DNA of 64,000 bases from Haliotis cracherodii (Eukaryota), in NCBI RefSeq assembly GCF_022045235.1, contig NW_027266267.1, positions 25,668,001 through 25,732,000 on the forward strand. The letters run 5' to 3'. Each line of letters starts with the position of its first letter. Position 1 is the first letter of the stretch. The notes beneath the pieces were generated by a model that was not told the origin of the DNA, searched no databases, and saw only the letters and a program-made list of their open reading frames with translations. The position numbers and the translations under genes were made by a program. Below are positions 1,526 to 45,672 of this stretch, piece by piece.

Positions 1526-3936
1526 ATGCGTGCCGCCCACATCGTGACTTGGCTGTTCTTCTGTCTGCCGTTCTTGCAATGCGACGAGACTATCACCATC
1601 TTTCCCGAGTTGCTGAAGATTGGAGATGGCGTTAACTTTGACCATGGACGCTGGAACGGCAAGAACGTCCTTGACAATACCCCTGATATTGCACGTGTCA
1701 AACAAATAGGAGCAACGACGGCCAGATGGGTGAAAGCCGAGGGTTCGGGCGGTGTCTTTGAGCACGTAAGGTCTATAGAAACTGTTTAACATTTTGATTA
1801 CCAGTATTTACCAATTGGAAAATAACAGTGAAACCCCACATGCTTACGATAGAGTCGAAATCGTCAATTGATTTCTGATGAAAATGGAAAGGGTTTTATT
1901 TCTTCTATTTACTTAACAGGGTTATAACGTTTCGTTTATCTGTCCAGGCAACGGAAAACCCCCACAGGAAGGGATATCCCGACCCTGCATACTTCGATTC
2001 CCAAAAAGGGCAATTCGCACAAAAATACTTGGCCAACATGCAAGGATACGGTCAGCCGGAAATGGTCATGATGACGTCAGGTGAAAATGCCCCAATTATA
2101 TTCACAAAACTTCATAACTGCCATCAGTGTGACGAGTGAACGCTTTAACCACCAGACCACTAGGCCATCCAACTTCCCCTACAGCCAAGTAAAGTTACTG
2201 GTTAGAATTGTCCTCATCAATCCATGCTTGTTGTAAGAGGCGACTAACGGGATTGGGTGGTCAGGCTTGCTGACTTGGTTGATGCATGTTATCGTATCCC
2301 AATTGCGTAGAAAGATGGTCATGATCTCAATCAGTGGATTGTCTGGTCCTGATTCCATCATAAAGATGGAGCTCAGAGTGCGGAGTTCAACAAACAAACA
2401 ATCAAATAAATATTATTCCCTTACACGGATTTAAAAACTAGCAAGCTTACAAACTTGTTACCTATGATGTATGTATTTACAGGGAAGCTTTGGCCACACT
2501 GGATAGACAAATCCCACCACAAGGGGTTGTTTCCCAATAATATCGATGCTGCTGCGGAGTTTGAGTATCTTCTCATCGACGCTGTAGACAAAGGAACCAA
2601 AGGAACCCTTCCATTATTCTTTGAAGTCATCAACGAACCAGATGGCAAGTATGCCAGCACAAACTGGTCGACATTCATCTCATACCACGAAGTGACATCT
2701 AAGAAAATCAAATCGAAATATCCACAAATCAGAGTGGGAGGGCCCACGTATACAGGCGCATCTTCTAGTTATGACGCCAATGGATTCAGGGTCTGGAGCA
2801 AGATGGCTGACTTCATGGACATGGCTCTGGACCATCTCGACTTTTTCTCCTTTCACTCCTACGCTGGCCTGGACGTTCACGGAGGCGCTCACCAGTTCCA
2901 TGCTTCTGAAGCAAAGTTGTTTGGTCTTCTTGACCTTATTGAGAGTTATGCCCATAAGAAGAAAGGAAAGTCGTTCGATGTAATCATCAGTGAATTTGGC
3001 ATGGGGAGTATATCGGGGTTGGATGAACAGAAACCATCCCCTTTCATTGACTGGGGTCATATCTATCAACACAACGACCAAATGTTTACCTTCCTTCAAC
3101 GTCGTGATGTGATGAGAAAGGTTGTTGCTTTCTTGCTGACCTACACTGAGCTTAAAGGACAAGCCAGCATCAACTACAGTTTGTTTGACAAGCACCACAA
3201 CGTTAGGGATGTTGCTGACGCTTTCAAGTTCTGGATGAACTTCCGCAATGCGATGATGTTTTTGAGGGTGGACAGTCAGTTCCACAACGGTGAGAGAAAC
3301 ATTGTGCCTCACATCCTACTGGACAAATCTTCAGGAACTGTTTATATCCTTCTTCACAACCATGACCAAAAGCCCACGCACGTGAAGCTAAATTTTGACA
3401 AAGGTTGGCTCCATCCGACAAGTGGAAAGTCCACCTGTGAATATCTGAACGCACAGAAGAAACCGATCCTAGCTAAGGACCAATCAGTTCACGTCACTAA
3501 CTCCATGGTAACTGTTCCTGCTGAAGCGAGTTGTTACTTCCAGTTCCACACAACCCACAACTTTGCCCATGCTCCGACTGTGACCCAGAACACCTACTAC
3601 TCCACCGACATGGTTGTCCCCATTCACAACACCGTCGTCGATGTTAAAGTAAACGTCCCGAACATTGGCAACATTGACTTTGTTCGTCTGAGGATCAGTC
3701 TCAGCAGAGACAGCAAGGCCACTCACGGACCTCCAAAGACGATCATGATGAACAATCACCCATTGACCTCCTTCTACTCCCTCCAGGCTGGCCATTCCAG
3801 TTCCACGGTGTTTGAGACCTACGAGTATGACGTCCCTGCCAGCATCGTACGACAGCACAACAACGATGTTAAGATTACCTTTGTTCACACTGGAGGCTTT
3901 GTGTCTACCGTCGCATTGGTGGTAGGCAGGCACTGA
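1526..3936 (+). CDS. GH86-like beta-porphyranase/agarase, paralog A1 (intact, ~608 aa, secreted)
   Basis: Exons 1526-1765, 1948-2080, 2483-3936 joined by GT-AG introns (phase 0, phase 1) give a continuous 1827-nt frame. Signal peptide MRAAHIVTWLFFCLPFLQC. Clan GH-A motifs EVINEP (acid/base) and IISEFG (nucleophile), plus VGGP, DFFSFHSY, ENPHRKGYPDP. C-terminal TYYS...RLR...N.V.ITF..GGFVSTVAL resembles the beta-porphyranase A C-terminal domain. Confidence 0.85.
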
Positions 3937-4596
3937 ATTATTTGTCAATGGTCAGAGAGAGAATTCACGATAAACGTAATTATGACGATACCCTTTGAAG
4001 CTTAAAACCTCAAACAATTAACAAAGACATCCTTATGCATTCGAGAAACAAAACAATTCCAACCACTGTATGTATGAATAAAGTCAGAGGTGAAAATGTT
4101 TCTTTCTTGTTTGGTAGTTATTTTTTTAGATAGGTTTTTATGTACAACGCGGCTCATCAGGGAGTTAGTAAATGTGGGATTTATATACACTTCCGCGCAC
4201 ACATTTCCGTCTACACTCGAAAACTGGATTTGACCAAAACATAAAAGAAACACTCATGTTCCAAAATACAAGTGATACCTGTATCAAACACATAACCTTC
4301 GAATAACAGTTTCTTGTTTGTGTCATGTTTATGCACAATCAAACGTGGGTGTGTACGTTCTACAGACGTTACAATGTAATATGGATTTACACAGTCTAGA
4401 CCTTCCATGATAAGATTGGTCAAGAACCCAACAATATGTGTCGTCAGCATATGAACATCTCGCAATGCAGGTGCTCCTCCTGACCGTTCTGTGCAATCTC
4501 GCATGAGGGGAGTATTCACTCACAATTTCCCCTGGAACTTATTTTCGGAAGCGTAACAATGAAAAGTGGAAAGGTGAAAGCGGGCTTGACACCCCG

Positions 4597-4740
4597 GACG
4601 TTGGGGTAGCCTAGTGGTTAAAGCGTTCGCTCGTCACGCCGAAGACCCGGGTTCGATTCCCCCCATTGTTACAATGAGTGAAGCATATTTCTGGTGTCCG
4701 CGATATTGTTGAAATATTGCTAAAAGCAGGGTGAACAAAT
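4597..4740 (+). mobile_element. tRNA(Asp-like)-derived SINE family 2
   Basis: GGGTAGCCTAGTGGTTAAAGCGTTCGCTCGTCACGCCGAAGACCCGGGTTCGATTCCC with A/B boxes; duplicate at ~17045-17190. Confidence 0.8.
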
Positions 4741-5016
4741 AACAAGCAAAGCGCCCACGTACTGTTTGGTCACTGTTTCGAAAGATTGTTTCCTCTGATA
4801 GTTGGAGCCGAACAATTTATTGTTCAATGATTCTTCAAGTGAATTATTAATTTTCGGTACAGTTTCATTGAACAATCCAGACCTTTATATGAATCATTTC
4901 CATACAGGTCACTTAAAATCCAGCCAGGAAGATTCCCAAATTCCTCAAACACAACCAGCACAACATCAAAGGTTATAGAAACCCACAAATGATTATGTTG
5001 AAAGGTATATATATTC

Positions 5017-5298
5017 AAGTGAGTGAGTGTGTTGGGTTTGACGCCGTTTTTAACAGTATTCCAGTTAAATCGCGGCATGTCAGCTTAATGTGGGAGGAAA
5101 GCCCGAAGTGATGCAGGTCTCAGACGTTTACCACTTCGGCGAAACCCACGAGCACGGGTATGGTGCTGACAAACCTAGAAACGTTATCGGGGCGAACCGG
5201 GATTCGAACCTACAATCACAGGTTTCTGGCGTGCCAAAGGGACACAACTCTGCACAGCGAATCGCGGCGCCTTAGACGACTGGGCCACGCGTGCCCCC
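5017..5298 (-). mobile_element. SINE family 1
   Basis: Reverse complement of 543-815; duplicate at ~17476-17756. Confidence 0.85.
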
Positions 5299-6267
5299 AC
5301 ATATATTCAAGGCGAAACTCCATATATAAATCCATAAATTTCCACTAAAAGTCCGTGATTTTACGACATGTCTGCAGGCAAAGTTGTTAGAAGGTTGATG
5401 TCTGGTCCTAGTTATAAGTCTATACTGAAAACACAAGTAAGTTCAAAACACGACGTGAATATATGTCTAGATAACCAAGCCTCGGATATATGGCTAGACA
5501 AACACGACCTGGACATATCGTTAGATAACAACTTTAGATGTGTTTTCATGACGCTTGGGTGTCGACTTGAGGTATTAGGAAAACTCCAATTGCCGCAGGT
5601 GGAGATGATAAAGAGGTTAAGCACTTCAGTATAATCCACAAGGACGTATTTATTTGTGACAAAGGCTCATGTTCAGTAATAGCCGTAATTTATTTTCGCA
5701 AGAGACATTAAACATCTTTTACAAAAGATGATAAACCATTATCAAATCCTTCTTTGAAAAGTTGTCTCAGGAACATACTATGCATAAGAATTACATATTT
5801 TGGATGATAATTTGTGATCAATGACAAACAAAGATAACAGCGTTCCTGGTGCTGGTATTGACAGAAAAAAACATTAATAGGACTATTTGGACGTACATTT
5901 TATATCAACGGCACCTGTTCAAAACCTCAAACCTCCGAATCATTTAACATTACGTTAGGGACCACCATCAGCGCTAATTTCATCTTCAGTACTAAGAATA
6001 ACAGAGTATATGAATCTAAATAGATAATCCAAGGAATGTTCTGCTTTTTTGCTAAGGCTAGATGGGATTAAGAAAAAAATAAACCTGTTCCCCAAATACT
6101 GAATATATTTGTGAAAAATAAAGTGTTGTGGGTTAAAAAAATGTGTTTGGCTTTTATTTTTCGGCTCTTTAAGCCGACTGAGAAAGATATGCTCCATCAA
6201 ACCAAAACTGCTAGGGCCTCATGAATAATAAATGTCGATACCTTATTCATCTTCTTGGTCTTTACAG

Positions 6268-6655
6268 ATGTTGATTGGCCTCACTGGCTGGACCAGTCCG
6301 AGCACCACGGCGTCTTCCCCAACAGCATCGACGTGGCAGCAGAGTTTACCTTTCAAGTCATGGAAGCAGTCGACACAGGAACAAATGAGAAGGTTCCTTT
6401 ATTCTTTGAAGTCATCAATGAACCAGATTCACAGATTCACTATATGAACTGGACAATCATTGTTAAATTCACCAGGCTGTTGTCCAGAAACTGAAATTGA
6501 AGTATCCTCACACCCATGTTGGAAGCCCGACACACACTGATGCATCAGCTTCCCTTGCCCAATGTGATTTCAGCGCTTTTAAGAGGACGGAAGAGGAAGA
6601 TGATCACAAACCATCACCTTGTCTTGACTGGGCATGCGCATGCCAACACAAAGCC
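6268..6655 (+). pseudogene. GH86 exon-3 relic (type C), frameshifted and internally deleted
   Basis: Acceptor tttacag at 6267, then DVDWPHWLDQSEHHGVFPNSID...FFEVINEPD. The frame breaks near 6480, and KYPHTHVGSPT joins directly to KPSPCLDWA. Ends at a SINE. Confidence 0.85.
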
Positions 6656-6667
6656 CAAAAGTTTGGA

Positions 6668-6920
6668 TGGCATGGGTGGCCTAGTCGCTGTGCAGAGTTG
6701 CGTCCCTTGGGCACCTCAGAAACTTATGATTGTGGATTCGACTACAGTTTCAAACTGATTATGTTTCTAGGTTTGTCAGCACCATACCAGTGCTTTTGAG
6801 TTTCACCAAAGTGGTGAACGTCTAAGACCTGCATTTCTTCGGGCTTTCCTCCAATATCAAGCTGACACACCGTGATATAACTGGAATATTGTTGAAAGTG
6901 GCTTTTAAATCACTTACTCA
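6668..6920 (+). mobile_element. SINE family 1 at the 3' end of the GH86 relic
   Basis: Family homology; duplicate at ~19125-19367. Confidence 0.8.
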
Positions 6921-8720: not shown

Positions 8721-11700
8721 ATGAAAACAGCAGACATGAAATGTCTGACACTTTTCGTGTCTATTCTATCAAGCGCAAGATGTGATTACACCGTGTCCAT
8801 CTTTCCTGAAATTCTGAAGATTGGTAAAGTTACACATTTCGACCACGGGCGATGGAATGGGAAGAATGGATTGGACAGCTCAACAACAATTCCTCTTGTT
8901 AAGGAGGTTGGAGCAACCGCAGCCAGGTGGTTGAACAGAGACTTGGGAAATGGGTTGTTTGAGAAGGTGGGACATATTATATTATTTCCGAATCTTTAAA
9001 TAGCATTGTATTGCTCCTCCATCTAAATGAGTGAGCGAGAGAGTTTGGTTTAACGCCGCTTTTAACAGTATTTCAGTTATGTCACAGCGTGTCAGCTTGA
9101 TGTGGGAAGAAAGCCTGAGGTGATGCATGTGTCTAACGTCTACCACTTTGGTGCAAACCAAGAGTAGGGAGACAAACCTAGAAACATAAACGGGGCAAAC
9201 GGGATTCGAACTCACGATCATACGTTTCTCGCTTGCGCCTTTGACGACTGGGCCACCTCTAAAAGAAGGAATCTTTAAGGGACTGGGTTTTATGCCGCTT
9301 TTAGCAACATCATAGCAATATCATGACAGGGCACACAGTGTGGATGAGTTGGTAGTGTTTCATTGCATACAACAACTGGTGGCCGAATTGATGTCCCCCC
9401 ATGGTCATAGAAACGTGGTCTAACTTAGTTTACTGGTGGACTAATGCCAATATGTACTGGTGATAACTTAAATTTTTTTCGCTGTCCTTTGTTAACAGGT
9501 TTTAATTATTAGAAACATGTTTCTATCGTTTTAAAGCTAAACATAAAACACACTCACCCACCCACTCAGTATTCCCACTCACCCACTCACTCACCCACTC
9601 GCCAACTCACTATCTCACTCGCCCACTCAGTGTCCCACTCACCCACTCATTATCTCACTCGCCCACTCGCCCACTCACCCACTCACTATCTCATTCTCTC
9701 ACAATGTACCCGTGTGAGGAGTGAACCAAGGCACCTCGTGAGGACCGAGGTGTAAGGCTAGCTTTTAGCCTTATGCAACTGTAATGCCACTTAATACATA
9801 TCACTACCCAACGATCCAACTTACAAGATAAATTCAGCAATGGCATACTAATACCAATCGTGTAAGGGGCATGATAAAATTTCAAGAGGTACAGAACGCA
9901 CTGGAGGCCCATTCACTGAGGTAACGCGACTGGTTGTGCAGTGTTACGCCCCTTTGGCCTGCCAGAGACCTAAGATCAAAGGTTCGAATCCTGGTTAGTC
10001 CTAATATTGTTTCAGCAACGAAGCATGTTGACACGCCGTAATATAAAACAGTCCACAGCAGCTTAAAACTCTCACTCTCTCACTCACTCAGTCAACATTT
10101 AACTCTCTATCACGTTTCATGTCAGGCACCTGAGAACCCCAACAAGAGGGGCTATCCTGACCCGAAGTACTTTCAGGCCCATCAAAACGAAATCAGCAGC
10201 AGTTACTTGAACGTCGTGAATGGATATGGCAATCCTGAAGTTGTCATGGAAATAAAAGGTATTTCAATTTTTATTCCAGTGTGAATCAATAGAGGTTAGC
10301 ACGCGAGTGTGTTTTTGGGAGTGTCTTTCTTATATTCTATGGTCGAAAGAAGTAACCTCATATCTCACAAATAATAATGTATAATGTCGTCATAATATCC
10401 GTTAAAAGTTGTTGACAGAAGAGGATGCACTTTCATTCACTCACTCAGAGGCATTATTTTTCTTATTTAGGTTTGTATTGGCCTCATTGGATGGACACCT
10501 CGGCCCACCACGGATTCTTCCCTAACAACATCGATGCGGCAGCCGAGTTCGTCTTCCTGCTGGTCGACGCGGTCAACAAAGGAACCAATGGAAAACCGCC
10601 TCAATTCTTTGAAGTTATCAATGAACCAGATGGTCAATGGAAGAACACAAACTGGACTACCTTTATCACATTTCACCAGGCAGTGGCTCAGAAAATTAAG
10701 GCAAAATATCCAAATATCAAGGTCGGTGGGCCAACGTATACTGGAGCTTCAATTTTGTTTGACCGTAATGACTTCCGGACTTGGAAGACATTGGCAGAAT
10801 TTCTAGACATGGCTCTGAACCATTTAGACTTTTTCTCGTTTCATTCCTACTCAAGTATGGATGTGAGTGGAGGCTCACACCATTTCCACGGGAGCTCCGA
10901 AGCTAAGCTCTTTGGTCTTCTGGATCTGGTTGAGAGCTATTCTCAGAAGAAGAAAGGTAAATTGATTGATATCATTGTCAGTGAATTTGGTCTCGGTCCG
11001 GTATCAGGACTTGATGTACAGAAACCATCCACCTTTCTTGACTGGGCGTATATTTATCAACATAATTCCCAGATATTCACCTTTCTACAACGTCGGGATG
11101 TCATGAGAAAAGCGGTAGCTTTCCTGCTCACATCTACTGAACTTAAAGGGCAGGCAAGTATTAACTATAGCATCCTTGATAAAAACCACAACGAGAGGGA
11201 CATTGCGCAAGCTTTCAAGTTCTGGAAGTCCATCTATGACACAATGACATACTTGCGAGTAGACAGTCAGTTCCATAATGCTGAGAGGAAGATTGTACCC
11301 CACGTTTTAGTTGATCAAGGGAACGGCAGCCTCAGCATTCTCCTCCATAACAATGACCAAAAGCCAAGTCATGTGACCCTACATTTTGACAAAGGTTGGT
11401 TCCATCCGACAAGTGGAAAGTCCACCTGTGAATATCTAAACGCACAGAAGAAACCAACTCTAGCTACAAACCAACCAGTTCATGTCACTAACTCCATGGT
11501 AACCGTTCCTGCTGAAGCGAGTTGTTACTTCCAGTTCCACACAACCCACAACTTTGCCCATGCTCCGACTGTGACACAGAACACCTACTACTCCACCGAC
11601 ATGGTAGTCCCCATTCACAACACCGTCGTCGATGTTAAAGTAAACGTCCCGAACATTGGCAACATTGACTTTGTTCGTCTGAGGGTTAGTGTCAGTTTCA

Positions 11701-11933
11701 GCATGAAGTCTCCCCATCAGAAACTAAAGTCGGTGGTTGTTAACACGCACACCTTGACGTCCTTCTACTCACTGCATACCCACAGCGGCGCTGGTGAAGA
11801 CACTGTATGGGAGGTCTTTGAGTACAACGTCCCCAACAACATGCTACACCAACACAACAATGACGTCAAACTTAGCTTCTCCGAGGCTGGGGGTTATCTG
11901 TCTACTGTGGCAGTGATCGTTGGGAGTCACTGA
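8721..11933 (+). CDS. GH86-like beta-porphyranase/agarase, paralog B1 (intact, ~613 aa)
   Basis: Exons 8721-8966, 10126-10258, 10471-11933 with the same intron positions and phases as A1. Signal peptide MKCLTLFVSILSSARC; EVINEP and IVSEFG present. Confidence 0.85.
9028..9258 (-). mobile_element. SINE family 1 (degenerate) in B1 intron 1
   Basis: Family homology. Confidence 0.7.
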
Positions 11934-12984: not shown

Positions 12985-13132
12985 NNNNNNNNNNNNNNNN
13001 NNNNNNNNNNNNNNNNNNNNNNNNNNNNNNNNNNNNNNNNNNNNNNNNNNNNNNNNNNNNNNNNNNNNNNNNNNNNNNNNNNNNNNNNNNNNNNNNNNNN
13101 NNNNNNNNNNNNNNNNNNNNNNNNNNNNNNNN
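12985..13132. other. Assembly gap (148 N)
   Basis: Run of N following a CA-rich simple repeat. Confidence 1.
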
Positions 13133-13386: not shown

Positions 13387-16370
13387 ATGCGTGCCGCCCA
13401 TATCGTGACATGGCTGTTCTTCTGTCTGCCGTTGGTGCAATGCGACGAGACTATCACCATCTTTCCCGAGTTGCTGAAGATTGGAGATGGTGTTAACTTT
13501 GACCATGGACGCTGGAACGGCAAGAACGTCCTTGACAACATCGTCGATGATATTGCACGTGTCAAACAAATAGGAGCAACGAGGCCAGATGGGTGAAAGC
13601 CGAGGGTTCGGGCGGTGTCTTTGAGCACGTAAGGTCTATAGAAACTGTATAACACTCTGAATACCAGTATTGTCCTATGGCGTAATGTGTAAGAAATTGT
13701 CTGTAGTTATGTGGTGAGTGAGTGAGTGAATTGCGGTGCCTTAAGCAATTCAACCGTCAGTACCCCGTGAGAACAATGAGAACCCACATGTGTCACACAT
13801 ATAAATACAGCCTTACAGACCTTTGGCCTCATAAATCATAAAACATATAAAACGTTTATCGAAGGTTATTGGTAGTTGTCGGTAGTTGTCGGTAGTTATC
13901 GGTAGTTGTCGGTAGTTGTCGGTAGTTATCGGTAGTTGTCGATAGTTGTCGGAAGGGAACGACCGTTTAAATATCCAACTGGTTGTATCTTTGTTTGAGA
14001 TATATGTTTGTTTTCTGTCACTGGTTCAAAACAAACTACGTGGCAAAGGAAAGTAAACACCAATGTCTGAGGGTGGCTACAAACGAACAAAAATGATGCA
14101 TTTTGATACAACTGAAATTGTGTTGCTGAAATCCTATTTGTCAGCAAATATTTTGTATATACAGTTAACTATCTCCTCCTGTTTCCGCACCCACAACCCC
14201 ACATCCAAACTATCATCTTGTAATCGATGCATGCAGTTTACAAATGCAGGTACGGACAAATAACAGTGAAACCCCACATGCTTACGATAGAGTCGAAATC
14301 GTCAATTGATTTCTGATGAAAATGGAAAGGGTTTTATTTCTTCTATTTACTAACTAGGATTATAACGTTTCGTTTATCTGTCCAGGCAACGGAAAACCCC
14401 CACAGGAAGGGATATCCCGACCCTGCCTACTTCGATTCCCAAAAAGGGCAATTCGCACAAAAATACTTGGCCAACATGCAAGGATACGGCCAGCCGGAAA
14501 TGGTCATGATGACGTCAGGTGAAAATGCCCCAATTATATTCACAAAACTTCATAACTGCCATCAGTGTGACGAGTGAACGCTTTAACCACCAGACCACTA
14601 GGCCATCCAACTTCCCCTACAGCCAAGTAAAGTTACTGGTTAGAATTGTCCTCATCAATCCAGGCTTGTTGTAAGAGGCGACTAACGGGATTGGGTGGTC
14701 AGGCTTGCTGACTTGGTTGATGCATGTTATCGTATCCCAATTACGTAGAAAGATGGTCATGATGTCAATCAGTGGATTGTCTGGTCCTGATTCCGTCATA
14801 AAGATGGAGCTCAGAGTGCGGAGTTCAACAAACAATCAAATAAATATTATTCCCTTACACGGATTTAAAAACCAGCAAGCTTACAAACTTGTTACCTATA
14901 ATGTATGTATTTACAGGGAAGCTTTGGCCACACTGGATAGATAAATCCCACCACAAGGGGTTGTTTCCCAACAATATCGATGCTGCTGCAGAGTTTGAGT
15001 ATCTTCTCATCGACGCTGTAGACAAAGGAACCAAAGGAACCCTTCCATTATTCTTTGAAGTCATCAACGAACCAGATGGCAAGTATGCCAGCACAAATTG
15101 GTCGACATTCATCTCATACCACGAAGTGACAGCTAAGAAAATCAAATCGAAATATCCACAAATCAGAGTGGGAGGGCCCACGTATACAGGCGCATCTTCT
15201 AGTTATGACGCCAATGGATTCAGGGTCTGGAGCAAGATGGCTGACTTCATGGACATGGCTCTGGACCATCTCGACTTTTTCTCCTTTCACTCCTACGCTG
15301 GCCTGGACGTTCACGGAGGCGCTCACCAGTTCCATGCTTCTGAAGCAAAGTTGTTTGGTCTTCTTGACCTTATTGAGAGTTATGCCCATAAGAAGAAAGG
15401 AAAGTCGTTCGATGTAATCATCAGTGAATTTGGCATGGGAAGTATATCGGGGTTGGATGAACAGAAACCATCCCCTTTCATTGACTGGGGTCATATCTAT
15501 CAACACAACGACCAAATGTTTACCTTCCTTCAACGTCGTGATGTGATGAGAAAGGTTGTTGCTTTCTTGCTGACCTACACTGAGCTTAAAGGACAAGCAA
15601 GCATCAACTACAGTTTGTTTGACAAGCACCACAACGTAAGGGATGTTGCTGACGCTTTCAAGTTCTGGATGAACTTCCGCAATGCGATGATGTTTTTGAG
15701 GGTGGACAGTCAGTTCCACAACGGTGAGAGAAACATTGTGCCTCACATCCTACTGGACAAATCTTCAGGAACTGTTTATATCCTTCTTCACAACCATGAC
15801 CAACAGCCCACGCACGTGAAACTAAATTTTGACAAAGGTTGGCTCCATCCGACAAGTGGAAAGTCCACCTGTGAATATCTGAACGCACAGAAGAAGCCAA
15901 TCCTAGCTAAGGACCAACCAGTTCACGTCACTAACTCAATGGTAACTGTTCCTGCTGAAGCGAGTTGTTACTTCCAGTTCCACACAACCCACAACTTCGC
16001 CCATGCCCCGACTGTGACACAGAACACCTACTACTCCACCGACATGGTTGTCCCCATTCACAACACCGTCGTCGATGTTAAAGTAAACGTCCCGAACATT
16101 GGCAACATTGACTTTGTTCGTCTGAGGATCAGTCTCAGCAGAGACAGCAAGGCCACTCACGGACCTCCAAAGACGATCATGATGAACAATCACCCCTTGA
16201 CCTCCTTCTACTCCCTCCAGGCTGGCCATTCCAGTTCCACGGTGTTTGAGACCTACGAGTACGACGTCCCTGCCAGCATCGTACGACAGCACAACAACGA
16301 TGTCAAGATTACCTTTGTTCACACTGGAGGCTTTGTGTCTACCGTCGCATTGGTGGTAGGTAGGCACTGA
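13387..16370 (+). pseudogene. GH86 paralog A2 with a 1-nt deletion in exon 1 (pseudogene or sequencing error)
   Basis: Exons 13387-13628, 14386-14518, 14917-16370. Reads gcaacgaggcc at ~13583 versus gcaacgacggcc in A1/A3, which shifts the frame to a stop at 13596. Exons 2-3 are intact. Confidence 0.7.
13871..13952. repeat. 10-bp tandem repeat (GGTAGTTGTC)n in intron 1 of A2
   Basis: About 8 copies; a matching array lies at 25684-25765 in A3. Confidence 0.9.
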
Positions 16371-18724: not shown

Positions 18725-19112
18725 ATGTTGATTGGCCTCACTGGCTGGACCAGTCCGAGCACCACGGCGTCTTCCCCAACAGCATCGACGTGGCAGCAGA
18801 GTTTACCTTTCAAGTCATGGAAGCAGTCGACACAGGAACAAATGAGAAGATTCCTTTATTCTTTGAAGTCATCAATGAACCAGATTCACAGATTCACTAT
18901 ATGAACTGGACAATCATTGTTAAATTCACCAGGCTGTTGCCCAGAAACTGAAATTGAAGTATCCTCACACCCATGTTGGAGGCCCTACATACACTGATGC
19001 ATCAGCTTCCCTTGCCCAATGTGATTTCAGCGCTTTTAAGAGGACGGAAGAGGAAGATGATCACAAACCATCACCTTGTCTTGACTGGGCATGCGCATGC
19101 CAACACAAAGCC
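18725..19112 (+). pseudogene. Duplicate GH86 exon-3 relic (type C)
   Basis: Near-identical to 6268-6655. Confidence 0.85.
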
Positions 19113-24788: not shown

Positions 24789-24944
24789 NNNNNNNNNNNN
24801 NNNNNNNNNNNNNNNNNNNNNNNNNNNNNNNNNNNNNNNNNNNNNNNNNNNNNNNNNNNNNNNNNNNNNNNNNNNNNNNNNNNNNNNNNNNNNNNNNNNN
24901 NNNNNNNNNNNNNNNNNNNNNNNNNNNNNNNNNNNNNNNNNNNN
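24789..24944. other. Assembly gap (156 N)
   Basis: Run of N with the same flanks as the first gap. Confidence 1.
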
Positions 24945-33899: not shown

Positions 33900-34104
33900 A
33901 TAGGAAATATTTAAAACATAATATCTGAATCATTTCCTCAACTATGTCCCGTTTACTGTCTGTACAGGAAATTGTGATTTGATCAAAACGCAAATCAGGA
34001 ATAGGTGTTGCGTATTCTTAAACGTTTTACTTTTAGCAGATATTTCTTATGAATAGGGAAAGGGTTTCGCCTTATTTACATGATGTGACTCGTAGGTGAT
34101 AGTG

Positions 34105-34250
34105 AACCAATCCGTTCTGTCCATTCCTGTCGCCCGTGGTCTAAATGAGTAACTTTGCCACTCTTAAGAATTTCGGGGTAATGGCAATTGTACTCACATC
34201 GTGCACGTGTAAGAATAGAAACGGAAAGCGTCATTCATTTAAGTTCTATT
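34105..34250 (-). pseudogene. GH86 exon-1 relic with duplicated upstream region
   Basis: Reverse strand reads MTLSVSILTRARCEY..YPEILKSGKVTHLDHGR. Region 34250-34660 matches the upstream region of G6 (~39930-40380). Confidence 0.75.
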
Positions 34251-36270
34251 CCTTTCACGATATATCGCCTCACTAACAAATGGATCAGTCAACAAGTCTG
34301 AATGCAATGCGGAGATATTCGAGACCTTTGTTATCCAATCTGTTTTCCCAATCCTGACAGTATAGAAATATAAGGTTAAAAAGGTGAAGTTATTGTTAAT
34401 TGTATCTGCTATAACCAAGACGCCTGTGTAATATTAAATAAAATATGCATATTATCATATAAATAAATGAAACATTTTCCGTTCCTAGTATTTCAGATAA
34501 GACGTACCACGTGAGAGATATCTTGATCAGCGTGAAAACATTATAAGTGGGATTGATCCACTGCACCGGAACATCAAGTACTCATGTGTACCAGTTAAGG
34601 CAAAGTCGAAAATTGCCGTTGTTTCTCATTTGTTTTTTTCCTGAATTATATCAGTTTTATTTGCTTGTTTGTTTGTTTGTTTGTTCTTTAACGCCGCACT
34701 CAGAAATATTCAAGCTATATGACATCGCTCTGTAAAATAATCGAGTCTGAACCAGACAATCCAGTGACAATCCAAGCAATTGGGATCGATGACATGCATC
34801 AACCATGTCAGCGAGCCTGACCAAGCGATCCCGTTCGTCGCCTTTTACGACAAGCATAGTCGCCTTTCACAGCAAGCATGGGTTAAAATACGGATTGTAC
34901 TGATTACTTCGTCAATGAATTATCTGGCATTACTATAACCAGGTTCAAATATCGCGATTTTGTCAGTTGCATCAACCAGCTTAGTGTAGTAAAACCAACG
35001 CTCTAAACCTACGGTGTGACAATATAAGCAATAATATAAAGGCTGATGTGATTTAGTTGCACTAGTGCTGACTACGGCCACAATTATACAATATAAGATA
35101 ATATAAGATATAGTATAAGTTGTAGGAGTAGCAAGGGAGGTACTTGCATAAAACCCCAAGTACCCCGAGTGATACTACTGCAACAAATGTATCTTACCGA
35201 CATGTTTCACTCCGTCATTTGAAAGAATTAAAACAAATTCAAACTTGACAGAAATCTACCGCTCGAAAATCCACGTGTCGTCTTCGTGGCGGGGTATGAC
35301 GCATTTATTCTCCCGCTCAGAAATTTATTTCCCTCTTTATCAAGATCACGTGATACAATCAGATGTCATCATTCTGACGTGGAGGTACGCTCAGAAAGTT
35401 TATAATGCATTTTTAGAGGCGTAGACACAATAAGTTATTGAAAGGAACGTTTTACAGACTAGCGGCCGTTGAAATAGGCTTATTCTAGGAGTAATCCCTC
35501 CACACAGTAAAAAAAAGCACAACCACATTTTTCTTCACAAGATGTCATTTAGGCATTTGAAGATGCTGGTGGTTGTGATTTCTTTGGTGGCAGACATGTT
35601 TTTGGTGGTAAAATGCACAACTGTGTGTCAAAATTAAGTAAATGAAATAAATGGCTCTAAAATAGTTAGTTTGCATATTGCAAAGCTCATCTTATCACAA
35701 AATCAGTGTGCTGAATTAGGAAACCTACAATAGAACAAATAAACGATTAGCAAAATTGTTTAAGTCGAGTTATGGCCTCAAATGTGTCAAAGACAGTAAA
35801 ATCACCCATTATTCATTTTTAAATCATTACAAAACTATAGATAATGTAAACTCCATATTGACACTCTGGTCATGTGATATCTCAAAATCTGCCTGAATGC
35901 TTTAGGAGCTAATACAAAAATCCAGGATTACTATAGGTATTATATAAAAAAAAGTAAATGTAAATGTTAATATATTATGAATGAAACACTTGAATAGAAA
36001 CAAACTACAAACTAATTTTAAAGCCATGGGTAAAAACATGTTTGATGGTTAATCATATTATCGAATAGTGTCATAACTTGGTATGTACCATACTGGTTTT
36101 AGAATGGCCCTTTTGAAAATTGTCTGCCATAACTGTCTTTGGCCTAATTAAAATATATTGTACTAACTAGAAATCTTTGCTGGTCACTGAAGTAACCCTG
36201 TGCCAAGTTTCACAAGTTATATGTTTTGATGAGATTTATTCAGCTATGCGTTTCCGGACAGAAATCACCC

Positions 36271-38411
36271 TCAGTGACTCCCAACGATCACTGCCACAGT
36301 AGACAGATAACCCCCAGCTTCAGAGAAGCTAAGTTTGACGTCATTGTTGTGTTGGTGTAGCATGTTGTTGGGGACGTTGTACTCAAAGACCTCCCATATA
36401 GTGTCTTCATTAGGGCCGTTGTGGGTTTGCAGAGAGTAGAAGGACGTCAAGGTGTGCGTGTTAACAACCACCGTCTTTAGTTTCTGATGGGGAGACTTCA
36501 TGCTGAAACTGACACTAACTCTCAGACGAACAAAGTCAATATTTCCAACGGGCGGGACGTTAACTTTAACATCGACGACGGTGTTGTGAATGGGGACTAC
36601 CATGTCGGTGGAGTAGTAGGTGTTCTGTGTCACAGTCGGAGCATGGGCAAAGTTGTAGGTTGTGTGGAACTGGAAGTAACAACTCGCTTCAGCAGGAACG
36701 GTTACCATGGCGTTAGTGACGTGAACTGGTGTGTCTGTATCTAGAGTTGGTTTCTTCTGTGCGTTTAGATATTCACAGGTGGACTTTCCACTTGTCGGAT
36801 GGAACCAACCTTTGTCAAAATGTAGCGTCACATGATTTGGCTTTTGGTCATTGTTATGGAGAAGAATGCTGAGGCTGCCGTTCCTTTGATCAACTAAAAC
36901 GTGGGGTACAATCTTCCTCTCAGCATTATGGAACTGACTGTCTACTCGCAAGTATGTCATTGTGTTATGGAAGTTCTTCCAGAACTTGAAAGCTTGCGCA
37001 ATGTCCCTCTCGTTGTGGTTTTTGTCAAGGATGCTGTAGTTAATGCTTGCCTGCCCTTTAAGTTCAGTATATGTGAGCAGGAAAGCCACCGCTTTTCTCA
37101 TGACATCCCGACGTTGAAGAAAGGTGAATATCTGGTAATTATGTTGATAAATATACGCCCAGTCAAGAAAGGTGGATGGTTTCTGTACATCAATTCCTGT
37201 TAATGGCCCAAGACCAAATTCACTGACAATGACGTTGAACTGGGTACCTTTCTTCTTATGAGAGTAGCTCTCAACTAGATCTAGAAGACCAAATATCTTT
37301 GCTTCGGAATTCCTATGGAAATGATGCGACCCTCCTGTTACATCCATATTTGTGTAGGAATGAAACGAAAAGAAATCTAGGTGCGTCAGAGCCATGTCCA
37401 GAAACTCTGCTACTCTCTTCCAAATCCGGAAGTCATAACGGTCAAAATGAGAAGAGGCTCCAGTTAAGGTTGGACCTCCAATCTTCATATTGGGATATTT
37501 TACCTTAATTTTCTGAGCAACAGCCAAGTGAAATTTGACATAGGTAGTCCAATTTGTGTTCTTGCCTTGAGCATCTGGTTCATTAATAACTTCGAAGAAC
37601 TGAGGTGGTTTTCCGTTGGTTCCTTTGTTGACTGCGTCGATCAGCAAGAAGACGAACTCGGCTGCAGCATCGATGTTGTTAGGGAAGAATCCGTGGTGGG
37701 CTGAGGTGTCAAGCCAGTGAGGCCAATTCAAACCTGGATTAAAAAAACCCATTTGATAACAACAGCAAAATATGGGTGTAGTTCAACTTGTTCAAAGCCC
37801 GGTTGCAATATATCAGTGACAAGGTAAACACTGTCGACTCAATAGTGTGGATACAAATATGCTGAGTATGAGCACATATTCTATTTTTTGTTTTTATATA
37901 AAAAACAACAACATTAATGCAATCTGCCACCACCAATTCCCCAAAAACGGAGAGCAGGTTGTTGGTGGTTTATTTCCATGGCCGTTTCAACCAAAAAGAT
38001 GGTACTTGTTGTTACCCTGTCAGGCGCTCGGAGTCGTGAGTGGGATATTCATGTTCAAATGCAGCAAGTACGGACTAGCACAAGCAGCCACACAAACACG
38101 TGCATGCTATGTTATTGATCATCTCATTCAAAAAGAATAGCCGACCACTTCCTTAGTCCAGTGGACAGAGCGTCCACCCGGAGAGCGGCAGGTCGTGGGT
38201 TCGATCCAAGACAGCGCCATACCATAAGACGTTAAAAGATGGTACTTGTTACCCTGCCTAGTGCTCGACATTAAGGTGCTTAAACAAGGACTGATCGGAT
38301 CATAGTCAGTATACTGTGTCTGTGTGGGGTTTTCATGTTAAACTGCGGCTTGGTATATCAGTGGGCTAACACCATAAAAAATCGGCATTAGTCCGGACTA
38401 ATAAAAGTAGC

Positions 38412-38446
<35 letters not shown>

Positions 38447-39917
38447 ACACAGACGCAGACGCACGCACGTACGCACGCATGCACACACACGCAAACGACG
38501 TTCATTCATCCACAACCTTCAAGAATAGTCCTTGTTGTCTAATGAACATTTGACATTGTGGTTGTATCAGGTCTACATCTCCCTCTTTGCTATCCCGCCA
38601 ACCCCTTGTCTGATGAAAGAGTATCACCTTCTATTGACAACTTTCAATGGGTTTTATGAACACATCTAAGACACGTAGCCTTTAATTCACACAAGAGTAA
38701 AAACTGAACAACCTTTTACTTCCATGACAACTTCTGGATGTTGGTATCCATTCACATTGTCCAAGTATTTGGTGCAGATTTCGTTTTGATGGGCCTGAAA
38801 GTACTTCGGGTCAGGATAGCCCTTCTTGTTGGGGTTCTCAGGTGCCTGACATGAAACGTGATAGATGGTATGTCACTCATCTTTACCTCTTAACATATAG
38901 AAACACCCTGTACATATGGGTACACGATTGGAAATACTATACCTCTGCTGAACGTTTACTTTAAGTGTTATCAGGGCATGATAGCGTTATGGTTGAGGTT
39001 CGATAAAATGAGTGCAATTGATACTTCTCTGGTGTACATTCTTTGTTCATGCAATCGACCACCCGGATGCATGCATGAATGATTAACTCTCTCACACAGT
39101 CTCTCATGATTGCTGTTGTTAGGGGCGATGAGGCATCACTAAAAGATTTATCGTCACGAAAAGTTACATTAATCATATGGGTATAATATCTGATCCACAT
39201 TTTCAGTGTCTCTGCCCTTTTCGTCATAATGCTGTGTTATCGCTAAAGGCAGCCTAAAGCTCTACCGACTCACTATTAGTGTAAATTGTCAAATAAATGG
39301 GAATGTGTGCTGAAATTTGATTGGTTGCAAAACGTTTGTTGAATGAGACTGGATCCAAGGACTTGTCGGACTTTTCTTCGCCTTTTGGTTTGGGGCAATG
39401 GTTTCAGATCAATTAACATTAGGTTTGATCCATATTAATCAGAACAAATTAATTTCAGTTGCTTTTTCCCAAATCCTGCTTTACGAGCGTGTTCAGGGAA
39501 GAAGATGATGTCCCAGCATTCCAGAGTGACATTCCATATGTTATTCCATGGCATCAAATATTCAAGATAAACCCGCAAATCTAAAACAAATAATATATAA
39601 ATGTCCCAAATGGAGAAACATGATAATTTTACGGTAACCAATTGCTTATGAAATAATGCAATACACCCCACCTTCTGAAACAGTCCACCTGCCAAATCTC
39701 TGTTCAACCACCTGGCCGCTGTCGCTCCAACCTCCTTAACATGAGGAATTGATGCCGGTGTGTCCAGTCCGTTCTTCCCATTCCATCGCCCGTGGTCGAA
39801 ATGAGTAATTTTCCCAATCTTGAGAATTTCGGGGTATATGGAAACTGTGTAATCACATCGAACACTTGACGGAATAGACACGAAAAGTATCATACATTTC
39901 AGTCCTACTGCGTTCAT
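36271..39917 (-). CDS. GH86-like beta-porphyranase/agarase, paralog G6 (intact, ~613 aa)
   Basis: Exons 39917-39672, 38845-38713, 37733-36271 with GT-AG introns in the same phases. Signal-like MNAVGLKCMILFVSIPSSVRC; EVINEP and IVSEFG present. Confidence 0.85.
38140..38490 (+). mobile_element. tRNA-derived SINE family 4 with (CA)n tail in G6 intron 2
   Basis: tRNA-like head then CATACCA.AAGACGTTAAAA.ATGGTACTTGTT core; homologous copy on the minus strand at ~52247-52527. Confidence 0.75.
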
Positions 39918-42568: not shown

Positions 42569-42780
42569 CATGTATTGGTACGGAAAGGATCTATATATGA
42601 ACTAGCTTTGAATCTCACTCTGATGTCTTTTTATGGTTAAAATGTCTACATGTACTGTAGGGATTGTTCAACTGATAAGATAGCAACATTCTTTCCAATG
42701 CATGGATATAAGGTACAGTCTTGTCAGCAGATTGGCTCTGATTCTCTCGTTAGGCGATATATATCGTGAAAGCAGCAGAG

Positions 42781-45672
42781 ATGAAATGTCTGACACTTTT
42801 CGTGTCCATTCTATCAAGCGCAAGATGTGATTACACCGTGTCCATTTATCCTGAAATTCTCAAGATTGGCAAAGTTACACATTTCGACCACGGGCGATGG
42901 AATGGGAAGAATGGATTGGACAGCTCATCATCAATTCCTCTTGTTAAGGGGATTGGAGCGACGACAGCCAGGTGGTTGAACAGAGACTTGGCAGAGGGAT
43001 TATTTCAGAAGGTAGGGCGTTCTTTATTCTTTCATAAGCAATTGGTTACCGTATAATTATTATGTTTATACATTAAGAAGATAACAGCCTTGTCCCACTG
43101 TCCAAACATGGAGACCAGAGAAGTATCGTTGCATCGAACCTCGATGTTCGTACTGAATTAAGATCCTATCCACGTTCTACATTGTTACGGACAGTATACT
43201 TTAACTGTGTAATCAGGCCTACCAATGAAAACCAGCTGAAAGCAACCAAACTACAGAACACTTGTACTGGAGATAGACATAGAAATGGCCACACAAATTA
43301 CAAACAAGACACACTTCCCATAAAGTGTGCATCGTAATGATTAAAACCTGCCACATTTTCAGTGGAAATCACTACAAACCAATTGCGGGCGCGCTGTTTT
43401 TTTGCTGTCTTGGTAATTCCCTGTGTTTGGTTCCAATGTAAACGTGGAAGGTGTTAATCAGTATGAAGTACACATGATGGGGAGTATGTCAAGTTTGTAA
43501 TTTGTGTGGCTATTTCTATTCACATTTTCCATAGTTTGGTTTCTCTCTGGTCGGTTTCATTGGTAGTCCTGATACTGTTATCCGCTGATACACTAAACAT
43601 TCCCCAAAGGCATATTATTACCAACAGTCTAACTCCCTTTATCTCTGTAACTGTACAAAATGTTTAAGGTATATATTATGTCATAAGGTAAAGATCAATG
43701 ACTAACCCTCTATCACCTTTCATGTCAGGCACCTGAGAACCCCAACAAGAAGGGCTATCCTGACCCGAAGTACTTTCAGGCCCATCAAAGCGAAATCTGC
43801 ACCAAATACTTGGACAATGTGAATGGATATCAACATCCTGAAGTTGTCATGGAAATAAAAGGTAGTTCAGTTTTCACACAGGTTAAATGTGTTCATAAAA
43901 GCCATTGAAGGTTGTTAATAGCAGGCGATAGGCTCTGATTAGCCAAGGGGTTGGTGGGATAGCAAATGGGTTGGACATGAAATGCAACACAATGTCCAAT
44001 GTTCAGTGGACAATATGGCTTTTCTTTTAGAATGAGGTGATCATTAACATAGTCATGTGCATATACGTGTGTGTGTGTGTGTGTGTATTAACACTTATGT
44101 GCTTATTCTCAGCATATTTATATCCAAACTATTTATAGTCGTGAAATTTGACCTTGTCGCACCGCATCGATATTTCACTGTCGTTACACACTAATGGTTT
44201 TGTATCCAGGTATCACTTGGCCTCACTGGATGGACACCTCAGCCCACCACGGATTCTTCCCTAACAACATCGATGCTGCAGCCGAGTTCGTCTTCCTGCT
44301 GGTCGACGCAGTCAACAAAGGAACCAAGGGAAAACCACCTCAATTCTTTGAAGTTATCAATGAACCAGAAAGCCAAAGGAAGAACACAAACTGGACTACC
44401 TTTATCACATTTCATCAGGCAGTAGCTCAGAAAATTAAGGCAAAATATCCCAGTATGAAGGTCGGAGGCCCAACGTTAACTGGAGCTTCCATGTTTTTCG
44501 ATCGTAACGACTTCCGGAATTGGAAGAGAGATGCCGAATTTCTAGACATGGCTCTGACCCATTTAGACTTTTTCTCGTTTCATTCCTACTCAAGTATGGA
44601 TGTGAGTGGAGGCTCACACCATTTCCACGGGAGTTCCGAAGCTAAGCTCTTTGGTCTTCTGGATCTCGTTGAGAGCTATTCTAATAAGAAGAAAGGTAAA
44701 TTGATTGATATCATTGTCAGTGAATTTGGTCTCGGTCCGGTATCAGGACTTGATGTACAGAAACCATCCACCTTTCTTGACTGGGCGTATATTTATCAAC
44801 ATAATTCCCAGATATTCACCTTTCTCCAACGTCGGGATGTCATGAGAAAAGCGGTGGCTTTCCTGCTCACATATACCGATCGACTTGGGCAGGCAAGTAT
44901 TAACTACAGCATCCTTGATAAAAACCACAACGAGAGGGACATTGCCCAAGCTTTCAAGTTCTGGAAGAACTTCTATGACACAATGACATACTTACGAGTG
45001 GACAGTCAGTTCCATAATGCTGAGAGGAAGATTGTACCCCACGTTTTAGTTGATCAAGGGAACGGCAGCCTCAGCATTCTTCTTCATAACCATGACCAAA
45101 AGCCAAGTCATGTGACGCTACATTTTGACAAAGGTTGGTTCAATCCGACAAGTGGAAAGTCCACCTGTGAATATCTAAACGCACAGAAGAAACCAACTCT
45201 AGCTACAAACCAACCAGTTCATGTCACTAACTCCATGGTAACCGTTCCTGCTGAAGCGAGTTGTTACTTCCAGTTCCACACAACCCACAACTTTGCCCAT
45301 GCTCCGACTGTGACCCAGAACACCTACTACTCCCCCGACATGGTTGTCCCCATTCACAACACCGTCGTCGATGTTAAAGTAAACGTCCCGAACATTGGCA
45401 ACATTGACTTTGTTCGTCTGAGGGTTAGTGTCAGTTTCAGCATGAAGTCTCCCCATCAGAAACTAAAGACGGTGGTTGTTAACACTCACACCTTGACGTC
45501 CTTCTACTCTCTGCAGACCCACAGCGGCGCTGGTGAAGACACTGTATGGGAGGTCTTTGAGTACAACGTCCCCAACAACATGCTACACCAACACAACAAT
45601 GACGTCAAACTTAGCTTCTCCGAGGCTGGGGGTTATCTGTCTACTGTGGCAGTGATCGTTGGGAGTCACTGA
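42781..45672 (+). CDS. GH86-like beta-porphyranase/agarase, paralog G7 (intact, ~608 aa)
   Basis: Exons 42781-43011, 43729-43861, 44210-45672. The upstream ATG of B1 is GTG here (42766), so the start is MKCLTLF. EVINEP and IVSEFG present; AATAAA at ~45704. Confidence 0.85.

What the first reader, a model, noticed from the sequence alone, without database searches (positions are those of the whole stretch)
1526..45672. Amplified cluster of intron-containing, secreted GH86-like porphyranase/agarase genes in an animal genome: candidate bacteria-to-mollusc gene transfer for digesting red algae
Seen: seven full-length loci and at least four relics of a ~610-aa protein with a signal peptide, clan GH-A catalytic motifs (EVINEP, SEFG) and a C-terminal domain ending in GG(F/Y)(V/L)STVA, set among spliceosomal introns and host SINEs. 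Established: characterised GH86 beta-porphyranases/agarases are bacterial, e.g. BpGH86A of Bacteroides plebeius, itself acquired from marine bacteria. Inference: this animal, probably a macroalgae grazer like abalone, encodes its own porphyran/agar-degrading enzymes from a domesticated bacterial gene, expanded by tandem duplication.
Basis: partly seen in the sequence, partly recalled or inferred. Interest (0 to 1): 0.92.

Follow-up and report, generated by a model that had tools for sequence, protein, structure and literature searches.

The report
Abalone's own GH86 seaweed-galactanase gene cluster
The black abalone genome carries a tandem cluster of expressed, intron-containing genes for secreted enzymes of family GH86 (agarase/porphyranase type), which I otherwise found only in bacteria, so the animal itself may digest red-seaweed galactans; databases already name these genes automatically, but I found no paper on them.

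Summary
Window 1526-45672 (Haliotis cracherodii, scaffold C4) holds seven three-exon loci for 608-613-aa GH86-like proteins. Four are intact (A1, B1, G6, G7). Three are damaged as assembled (A2, B2, A3). There are three decayed relics, not four.

GH86 membership is well supported:
- A family profile matches the solved GH86 enzymes at E 1e-116 to 1e-173.
- The AlphaFold model (pLDDT 90.8) matches only GH86 structures over its full length (TM 0.75-0.81).
- Both catalytic glutamates are kept.

The genes belong to the animal. They have GT..AG introns and SINE-like repeats inside introns. An RNA contig shows A1 exactly spliced and polyadenylated.

Molluscan sequences (abalone, mussels, pearl oyster, chiton) form one clade (100/100), at most 29% identical to any non-molluscan protein. 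I found no other eukaryote with the family. This fits one ancient bacterial transfer, not a recent one into abalone. The genome holds at least 48 full-length copies.

Activity, substrate and tissue of expression are untested. RefSeq already names these genes, but I found no paper. This scan found the same family earlier on other DNA of this genome (s1-834439).

The parts
1526..3936 (+). Gene A1, intact, 608 aa. Exons 1526-1765, 1948-2080, 2483-3936. The mRNA contig runs 1462-4100, with AATAAA about 20 nt before the poly(A) site.
   Evidence: RefSeq model P0208 (XP_071095171.1) maps here. RNA contig of run X10 lies on 1462-1765 / 1948-2077 / 2480-3439 with 0 mismatches; both skipped stretches are GT..AG, and there is a poly(A) loose end at 4100. 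The AATAAA is seen.
2224..2361 (.). SINE-like interspersed repeat inside intron 2 of A1. The same element sits in A2 and A3.
   Evidence: 8 copies in the window. DNA read depth is 100-fold or more above the flanks in bin 2201-2400.
4459..6721 (+). Relic pseudogene of unit 1, with decayed exon 1, 2 and 3 remnants in order.
   Evidence: tblastn pieces at 4459-4632, 4917-5039 and 6225-6721.
8721..11933 (+). Gene B1, intact, 613 aa. Exons 8721-8966, 10126-10258, 10471-11933.
   Evidence: Exons 1 and 3 are 100% identical to RefSeq P0202 (XP_071095172.1). Splice sites GT..AG.
12985..13132 (.). N run in the intergenic spacer between B1 and A2.
   Evidence: Flanks are identical to those of the second N run. 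Not filled.
13387..16370 (+). Locus A2. Exon 1 (13387-13628) carries a 1-bp deletion causing a frameshift. Exon 2 is 14386-14518 and exon 3 (14917-16370) is open.
   Evidence: Against A1, exon 3 has 18 synonymous and 3 non-synonymous differences.
16907..19190 (+). Relic pseudogene of unit 2, the duplicate of 4459-6721.
21162..23735 (+). Locus B2. Exon 1 is truncated at about 21356. Exon 2 is 21928-22060 and exon 3 (22273-23735) encodes the same protein as B1.
   Evidence: The 633 bp of unit 1 at 8916-9548 are missing. RefSeq model P0203 (595 aa) bridges the break with a GC donor and lacks 18 aa, including the family-invariant Arg.
24789..24944 (.). N run in the intergenic spacer between B2 and A3.
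   Evidence: Not filled.
25199..28154 (+). Locus A3. Exons 1 (25199-25441) and 2 (26199-26331) are open. Exon 3 (26730-28154) is broken by two frameshifts, near 27260 and 27555.
   Evidence: Exon 3 falls into three ORF pieces. tblastn shows frame changes. There is a 28-bp deletion relative to A1 3309-3336.
34088..34258 (-). Isolated exon-1 relic.
   Evidence: tblastn of P0002 residues 1-56, E 2e-11.
36271..39917 (-). Gene G6, intact, 613 aa. Exons 39917-39672, 38845-38713, 37733-36271.
   Evidence: Exon 3 is 100% identical to RefSeq P0204 (XP_071095173.1).
42781..45672 (+). Gene G7, intact, 608 aa. Exons 42781-43011, 43729-43861, 44210-45672.
   Evidence: Exon 3 is 100% identical to RefSeq P0206 (XP_071095174.1).

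Best explanation
This is part of the black abalone's own family of GH86 glycoside hydrolases.

Gene and protein. Each gene has three exons and encodes a protein of about 610 aa. The protein has an N-terminal signal-like peptide, a (beta/alpha)8 barrel and two C-terminal beta-sandwich domains.

Proposed mechanism (inferred). The protein is secreted, presumably into the gut or digestive gland lumen. It cleaves beta-1,4 links in agar-type sulfated galactans of red algae (agarose, porphyran, funoran) by the retaining double-displacement mechanism of clan GH-A. The Glu of EVINEP acts as acid/base and the Glu of SEFG as nucleophile.

Proposed origin (inferred). One bacterial GH86 gene entered the molluscan lineage before chitons, bivalves and gastropods diverged. 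It gained two introns and a secretion signal. In abalone it then multiplied by tandem duplication to at least 48 copies. Copies have since undergone gene conversion and occasional decay; this window shows four live genes, three damaged ones and relics.

Shown here: family membership by sequence and fold, kept catalytic residues, integration in the animal genome, splicing and polyadenylation, purifying selection, one molluscan clade.

Inferred only: secretion site, substrate, direction and date of the transfer.
For: Family membership:
- phmmer of exon 3 against PDB gives GH86 agarases 8H97 (7e-20) and 5TA1 (1e-19) over residues 53-497.
- The family profile gives 8H97 1.6e-173, BuGH86 1.5e-167 and BpGH86A 2e-116. 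The next family, GH39, reaches only 3e-10.
- Pfam finds BPA_C and Porphyrn_cat_1.
- The AF2 model of the B1 orthologue has pLDDT 90.8 and pTM 0.92. The Foldseek top 7 are all GH86 structures at TM 0.75-0.81; the next folds reach TM 0.51 at most.
- The SE[FY]G Glu aligns with the residue changed in BuGH86 E322Q. NEP and this Glu are invariant or nearly so across the family.

Animal gene:
- GT..AG introns.
- SINE-like repeat inside an intron.
- The scaffold is 45.3 Mb.
- Spliced, polyadenylated A1 RNA contig with 0 mismatches, and a second contig carrying nine B1/G7-type letters.

Selection: dN/dS is 0.16-0.30 between paralogues.

Distribution and tree:
- Named hits come only from Haliotis, Mytilus, Pinctada and Liolophura.
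- The Atlas cluster is 97% Eukaryota, mostly Mollusca, and its neighbouring clusters are bacterial.
- Molluscs form one clade at 100/100.
- The nearest outside proteins are at most 29% identical. Those that carry a name are bacterial, from marine agar-degrading bacteria of several phyla.

Expansion: at least 48 full-length exon-3 frames genome-wide. Five distant paralogues share the three-exon plan.
Against: - No enzyme assay exists, and at about 20-29% identity to characterised GH86 enzymes the substrate cannot be read from sequence.
- The filter-feeding mussels and pearl oyster also carry the family, so its ancestral role was not macroalga grazing.
- The tissue of RNA run X10 is unknown, and the run is only guessed to be RNA.
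- The tree is unrooted. The molluscan stem is long (0.94) and its nearest neighbours are long metagenomic branches with weak support (84/54). Nesting inside bacterial diversity is therefore not shown.
- The tree used LG+G4, because the mixture model did not finish.
- No SignalP-type prediction was possible.
Confidence: 0.7

Rival explanations
1. Same enzyme fold and family, but a different job. The proteins act on another glycan (bacterial or microalgal exopolysaccharide, the animal's own mucus or egg-coat galactans, other sulfated galactans), or serve defence or biofilm grazing rather than digestion of red macroalgae.
For: The family is present in the filter feeders Mytilus and Pinctada. Identity to characterised agarases and porphyranases is only about 20-29%. 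About 48 paralogues suggest several specificities. Five paralogues have lost the nucleophile and cannot be ordinary hydrolases.
Against: Every solved or named relative is an agarase, porphyranase or funoranase-like enzyme of agar-degrading marine bacteria. The large expansion is in a macroalgal grazer. Both catalytic residues are kept in 39 of 44 copies checked.
Confidence: 0.2
2. Vertical descent. An old eukaryotic or animal GH86-like gene was kept only in molluscs and lost everywhere else, so no horizontal transfer took place.
For: The molluscan clade has a long stem and is not shown to nest within any bacterial subgroup. It is shared by three molluscan classes, and each class forms its own clade.
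Against: No other eukaryote appeared at any convincing score among 1.84 billion representatives or among the named hits. The remaining family members I could name are bacterial and spread over at least four bacterial phyla. Vertical descent would need very many independent losses.
Confidence: 0.08
3. Part of the copy number in this window is an assembly effect. Units 2 and 3 (99.6% alike, each bordered by an N run with identical flanks) could be one locus, or two haplotypes, written twice. The frameshifts in A2 and A3 could be sequence errors.
For: Units are 98.2-99.6% identical and the N runs sit at the same place in each unit. A1 and A2 differ by 18 synonymous and 3 non-synonymous changes, as expected for copies or alleles that are both under selection.
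Against: There are three A copies, which is more than two haplotypes can give. H. rufescens has both the 608-aa (NTPD) and the 609-aa (NIVDD) A forms as separate genes, so the A1/A2-type duplication is real and older than the species split. A2 and A3 carry different lesions.
Confidence: 0.25
4. Bacterial contamination of the assembly.
For: The only point in favour is that the non-molluscan relatives I could name are bacterial.
Against: Spliceosomal introns removed in RNA, a poly(A) tail, host repeats inside introns, a 45-Mb scaffold, orthologous clusters in four other Haliotis assemblies, and at most 29% identity to any non-molluscan protein found.
Confidence: 0.01

Closest known systems
BuGH86 of Bacteroides uniformis (PDB 5TA0/5TA1/5TA5) and Aga86A_Wa (PDB 8H97), GH86 endo-beta-agarases
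   Same: Full-length architecture: (beta/alpha)8 barrel plus two beta-sandwich domains, TM 0.79-0.81. The NEP acid/base and SE[FY]G nucleophile motifs. The C-terminal GGxVSxVA ending.
   Different: Only about 19-23% identity. The abalone proteins are animal-encoded, have two spliceosomal introns and a eukaryotic signal-like peptide, and lack extra CBM or T9SS modules. Their substrate is unknown.
BpGH86A beta-porphyranase of Bacteroides plebeius (PDB 4AW7)
   Same: Same family and fold (profile E 2e-116, TM 0.75-0.80). The Pfam BPA_C and Porphyrn_cat_1 domains are named after it. From my own knowledge, it is also a textbook case of horizontal transfer of a red-alga enzyme into a consumer's system.
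   Different: That transfer was bacterium to gut bacterium and recent. Here the gene sits in the animal germ line and the event is ancient. Identity is 17% in the structural alignment.
Other endogenous polysaccharide-degrading enzymes of abalone, e.g. the host-encoded alginate lyase of Haliotis discus hannai (PMC6181387)
   Same: Both are host-encoded enzymes against an algal wall polymer in a grazing mollusc.
   Different: A different fold, family and mechanism (lyase versus retaining hydrolase) and a different substrate (brown-algal alginate). In the papers I could search, red-algal agar and porphyran breakdown in abalone is ascribed to gut bacteria (PMC5870069, PMC6181387).

Membership tests
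CAZy glycoside hydrolase family 86 (GH86) | Significant sequence similarity of the catalytic module to GH86 members, stronger than to any other GH family | tested here: met
   Single sequence: E 7e-20 and 1e-19 to 8H97 and 5TA1, against 1e-4 for GH39. Profile: 1.6e-173, 1.5e-167 and 2e-116 to the three solved GH86 enzymes, against 3e-10 for GH39. dbCAN/CAZy HMMs were not available.
CAZy glycoside hydrolase family 86 (GH86) | (beta/alpha)8 barrel followed by two beta-sandwich domains | tested here: met
   AF2 model with pLDDT 90.8 and pTM 0.92. Foldseek top 7 are all GH86 at TM 0.75-0.81 over about 650 columns; other GH-A folds reach TM 0.51 at most. Pfam BPA_C and Porphyrn_cat_1 hits, some below the gathering score.
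CAZy glycoside hydrolase family 86 (GH86) | Two catalytic glutamates of clan GH-A: acid/base in NEP and nucleophile after strand 7 | tested here: met
   EVINEP and SEFG are present in A1, B1, G6 and G7. The second Glu aligns with the position mutated in BuGH86 E322Q. Both are invariant or nearly so in mixed mollusc and bacterial alignments. 39 of 44 genome copies keep both.
CAZy glycoside hydrolase family 86 (GH86) | Endo-beta-hydrolysis of agarose, porphyran or funoran | not testable with these tools
   Needs recombinant protein and substrate assays.
Horizontally acquired bacterial gene in an animal genome | Physically integrated and expressed as a eukaryotic gene | tested here: met
   GT..AG introns, a host repeat in an intron, a 45.3-Mb scaffold, and a spliced, polyadenylated RNA contig.
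Horizontally acquired bacterial gene in an animal genome | Patchy distribution: absent from other eukaryotes, widespread in bacteria | tested here: met
   Named eukaryotic hits are only Haliotis, Mytilus, Pinctada and Liolophura. The Atlas neighbours are bacterial. 196 confirmed loci were found in bacterial genomes; the 80 kept span at least 4 phyla.
Horizontally acquired bacterial gene in an animal genome | Recipient clade nested within donor diversity on a rooted tree | tested here: inconclusive
   Molluscs form one clade at 100/100, but the tree is unrooted. Their neighbours are long metagenomic branches with weak support (84/54), and long-branch warnings apply.

The most novel reading that the evidence does not exclude
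A single bacterial GH86 gene entered the molluscan stem lineage before chitons, bivalves and gastropods split. That would be more than 500 million years ago by my own knowledge of molluscan divergence dates. The gene gained two introns and a secretion signal. In abalone it radiated into about 50 genes, including conserved nucleophile-less (Glu to Ala) forms that may act as galactan-binding proteins. Abalone could then depolymerise red-algal agarans on their own. This would revise the view that their own enzymes are insufficient and that gut bacteria do this work.
Probability: 0.45. Interest if true: 0.75.

Novelty: new member of a known kind. Interest (0 to 1): 0.6.

Why it matters
Papers on abalone digestion that I could search state that the host's enzymes do not suffice for macroalgal polysaccharides, and they credit gut bacteria with agar and porphyran breakdown (PMC5870069; PMC6181387). 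None of ten full-text searches found a report of an animal GH86.

A host-encoded, expressed GH86 family of about 48 genes would change several things:
- It would shift part of that digestive role to the animal.
- It would add GH86 to the short list of carbohydrate-active enzymes that animals took from microbes.
- It would give an unusually old and strongly amplified example of such a transfer.
- It would offer eukaryotic agarase/porphyranase candidates for aquaculture feed work on an endangered species, and for biotechnology.

The limit on novelty is that RefSeq's automatic annotation already labels these genes 'beta-porphyranase A-like' or 'funoran endo-beta-hydrolase-like'.

Tried and rejected
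- Copy number by read depth. Raw DNA runs X21-X23 gave only about 0-1x in unique bins, because about 1 in 100 reads was sampled. The reality of units 1-3 could not be decided.
- Tree with the mixture model. 95 rows did not finish in two 300-s runs. I replaced it with 67 rows under LG+G4, so long-branch artefacts remain possible.
- The search for related loci with a broad mollusc-plus-bacteria alignment failed for lack of a conserved stretch. A bacterial-only alignment worked.
The genomic context of the nearest metagenomic proteins (P0032, P0036, P0039) was therefore not seen.
- Literature. Ten searches (GH86 with abalone, mollusc or invertebrate; porphyranase with abalone; agarase with Haliotis; the RefSeq name; Littorina agarase; an HGT compendium) found no paper on animal GH86.
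- Contamination was rejected.
- A pure haplotig explanation was rejected for A1 versus A2-type copies, because H. rufescens has both forms.
- Crude 40-codon windows gave no clear sign of positive selection near the active site. The largest A-versus-B divergence lies in the last beta-sandwich.
- Spliced models were never joined for any tool. Exons were searched by reference, and full-length work used database proteins (P0001 and the RefSeq models).
- The N runs were not filled.

Full report
WHAT IS THERE

ORF listing shows five open frames of 492-502 aa and one broken into three pieces on the plus strand, and one open frame of 493 aa on the minus strand. Each is preceded by a short ORF that starts with a hydrophobic leader. 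tblastn with database homologues resolves every locus into three exons. All boundaries are GT..AG, with intron phases 0 and 1.

Four loci are intact:
- A1: exons 1526-1765, 1948-2080, 2483-3936.
- B1: exons 8721-8966, 10126-10258, 10471-11933.
- G6 (minus strand): exons 39917-39672, 38845-38713, 37733-36271.
- G7: exons 42781-43011, 43729-43861, 44210-45672.

Three loci are damaged as assembled:
- A2 has a 1-bp deletion in exon 1.
- B2 lacks the 3' end and donor of exon 1, because 633 bp present in unit 1 are missing.
- A3 has two frameshifts in exon 3.

Each A-B unit also holds a decayed copy with remnants of all three exons, at 4459-6721 and 16907-19190. An isolated exon-1 relic lies at 34088-34258 on the minus strand.

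THE N RUNS AND THE TANDEM UNITS

Self-comparison shows units of about 11.8-12.4 kb. Positions 1817-8915 match 14254-21356 at 98.2%. Positions 9549-12984 match 21359-24788 at 99.5%. Positions 13133-15742 match 24945-27554 at 99.6%.

Both N runs lie in intergenic spacer, have identical flanks, and interrupt no exon. I did not fill them.

Read depth was too thin to count copies. The A1-type (NTPD, 608 aa) and A2/A3-type (NIVDD, 609 aa) forms both exist as separate genes in H. rufescens. That duplication is therefore real and older than the species split. Units 2 and 3 could still be a recent duplicate or an assembly effect.

WHOSE GENOME

The window is G000:C4:25668001-25732000, and C4 is 45,300,709 bp long. 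This is the length of the contig that carries the Haliotis cracherodii RefSeq proteins XP_071095171.1 to XP_071095174.1. Those proteins match B1, G6 and G7 at 100% in exon 3, A1 at 100% in exon 1, and A1 at about 99% in exon 3 (the HSP runs a few residues into the intron). The animal is the black abalone.

THESE ARE ANIMAL GENES AND THEY ARE EXPRESSED

A contig of run X10 (same species; the run's RNA status is a guess by the tool) lies on 1462-1765, 1948-2077 and 2480-3439 with no mismatch. Both skipped stretches are GT..AG. Another contig ends at 4100 followed by a poly(A) run, and an AATAAA lies about 20 nt upstream.

A higher-depth contig over 3413-3603 carries nine differences from A1. All nine are the letters of B1 and G7. 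A B1/G7-type message is therefore present too.

Intron 2 of the A genes contains an interspersed repeat. It has 8 copies in the window and DNA read depth in the hundreds.

WHAT FAMILY

- Pfam gives weak clan GH-A hits plus BPA_C and Porphyrn_cat_1.
- phmmer against PDB finds the GH86 agarases 8H97 and 5TA1 over nearly the whole exon-3 product.
- A profile of 23 molluscan and 20 non-molluscan (metagenome-derived) sequences scores 8H97 at 1.6e-173, BuGH86 at 1.5e-167 and BpGH86A at 2e-116. The next family, GH39, scores 3e-10.
- I folded P0001, the H. rufescens orthologue of B1, rather than a joined model. It gave pLDDT 90.8 and pTM 0.92.
- In the Foldseek search the seven best chains are all GH86 (TM 0.75-0.81). 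GH30, GH39 and GH51 stay at or below 0.51.
- The Glu of SE[FY]G aligns with the residue replaced in BuGH86 E322Q. EVINEP aligns with EVINEP.

ORIGIN AND SPREAD

Named homologues come only from Haliotis (five species), Mytilus (four species), Pinctada and the chiton Liolophura.

In the exhaustive search of 1.84 billion representatives, the molluscan group scores E 1e-96 or better. A gap follows, down to 7.7e-32 at 29% identity.

The outside proteins are metagenomic or bacterial. Their named relatives are agar-degrading Flavobacteriaceae, Alteromonadaceae, Cellvibrionaceae, Verrucomicrobiota and Planctomycetota. The Atlas agrees.

The tree was built with IQ-TREE under LG+G4 on 67 rows. Molluscs form one clade (100/100) on a stem of 0.94. 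Inside it the chiton, bivalve and four Haliotis clades form a polytomy. The tree is unrooted, and the clade's nearest neighbours are long, weakly attached branches.

I read this as one ancient bacterium-to-mollusc transfer. The direction rests on distribution, not on rooting.

FAMILY SIZE AND SELECTION

- The genome holds at least 48 full-length exon-3 frames, in clusters on C4, C23, C80, C25 and C1.
- Five distant paralogues share the three-exon plan.
- 39 of 44 copies checked keep both catalytic motifs. Five have Ala in place of the nucleophile.
- dN/dS is 0.16-0.30 between paralogues.
- A tract of exon 3 is 91-98% identical between A and B types, against 60-78% elsewhere. This points to gene conversion.

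WHAT IS KNOWN

RefSeq names these genes automatically. Ten full-text searches found no paper on an animal GH86. Abalone papers credit gut bacteria with agar and porphyran breakdown and call the host's enzymes insufficient.

This scan found the same family earlier at C4:44.9 Mb (s1-834439). My genome count agrees with that note.

LIMITS

- Activity, substrate, secretion site and tissue of expression are untested.

Noticed in passing
G000:C4:24643732-24645183 (L081), C4:23710579-23712030 (L082), C1:4982519-4983979 (L083), C1:73268352-73269803 (L084), C1:73261133-73262578 (L085): Five paralogues elsewhere in the genome have Ala in place of the catalytic nucleophile (SA[FYH]G instead of SE[FY]G) but keep the acid/base Glu. 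Four have open frames. They belong to clades that also hold proteins of other Haliotis species. They may be non-hydrolytic galactan-binding proteins.
   Followed up: partly
window 3385-3655 (A1) versus 11373-11643 (B1): A stretch of about 270-360 bp of exon 3 is 91-98% identical between A-type and B-type genes, which are otherwise 60-78% identical. dS is near 0 here against about 1.2 elsewhere. This looks like a gene-conversion tract in the beta-sandwich region.
   Followed up: partly
window 21162-23735: The RefSeq model of B2 (XP_071094744.1, 595 aa) bridges the truncated exon 1 with a GC donor. It skips 18 residues that include an Arg invariant across the whole GH86 alignment, so the product is doubtful.
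   Followed up: partly
window 32778-33899 (+): An intronless 373-aa ORF with an N-terminal membrane anchor and a DXD glycosyltransferase sugar-binding domain (Pfam Gly_transf_sug, 2.8e-8) sits between the GH86 genes.
   Followed up: no
window 54149-55928 (+): ORFs with QRICH1 and DUF3504 domains (E 1.7e-14 and 5.7e-22). This fits the Crypton-like tyrosine recombinase noted earlier in this scan (s1-843402).
   Followed up: no
window 28920-30014: A satellite of about 35 units with a 31-bp period, about 93-95% alike, directly downstream of the broken A3 copy.
   Followed up: no
window 12985-13132 and 24789-24944: The two N runs differ in length (148 and 156) but have letter-for-letter identical flanks at the same place in two tandem units. 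That looks more like the same unresolved or masked element than like two independent scaffold gaps.
   Followed up: partly
window 400-1260, 4590-4810, 5000-5400, 9028-9236, 42297-42576, 61116-61395, 63091-63989: At least three interspersed repeat families have many copies in the window and read depths of hundreds (SINE-like). One lies in intron 1 of B1.
   Followed up: partly
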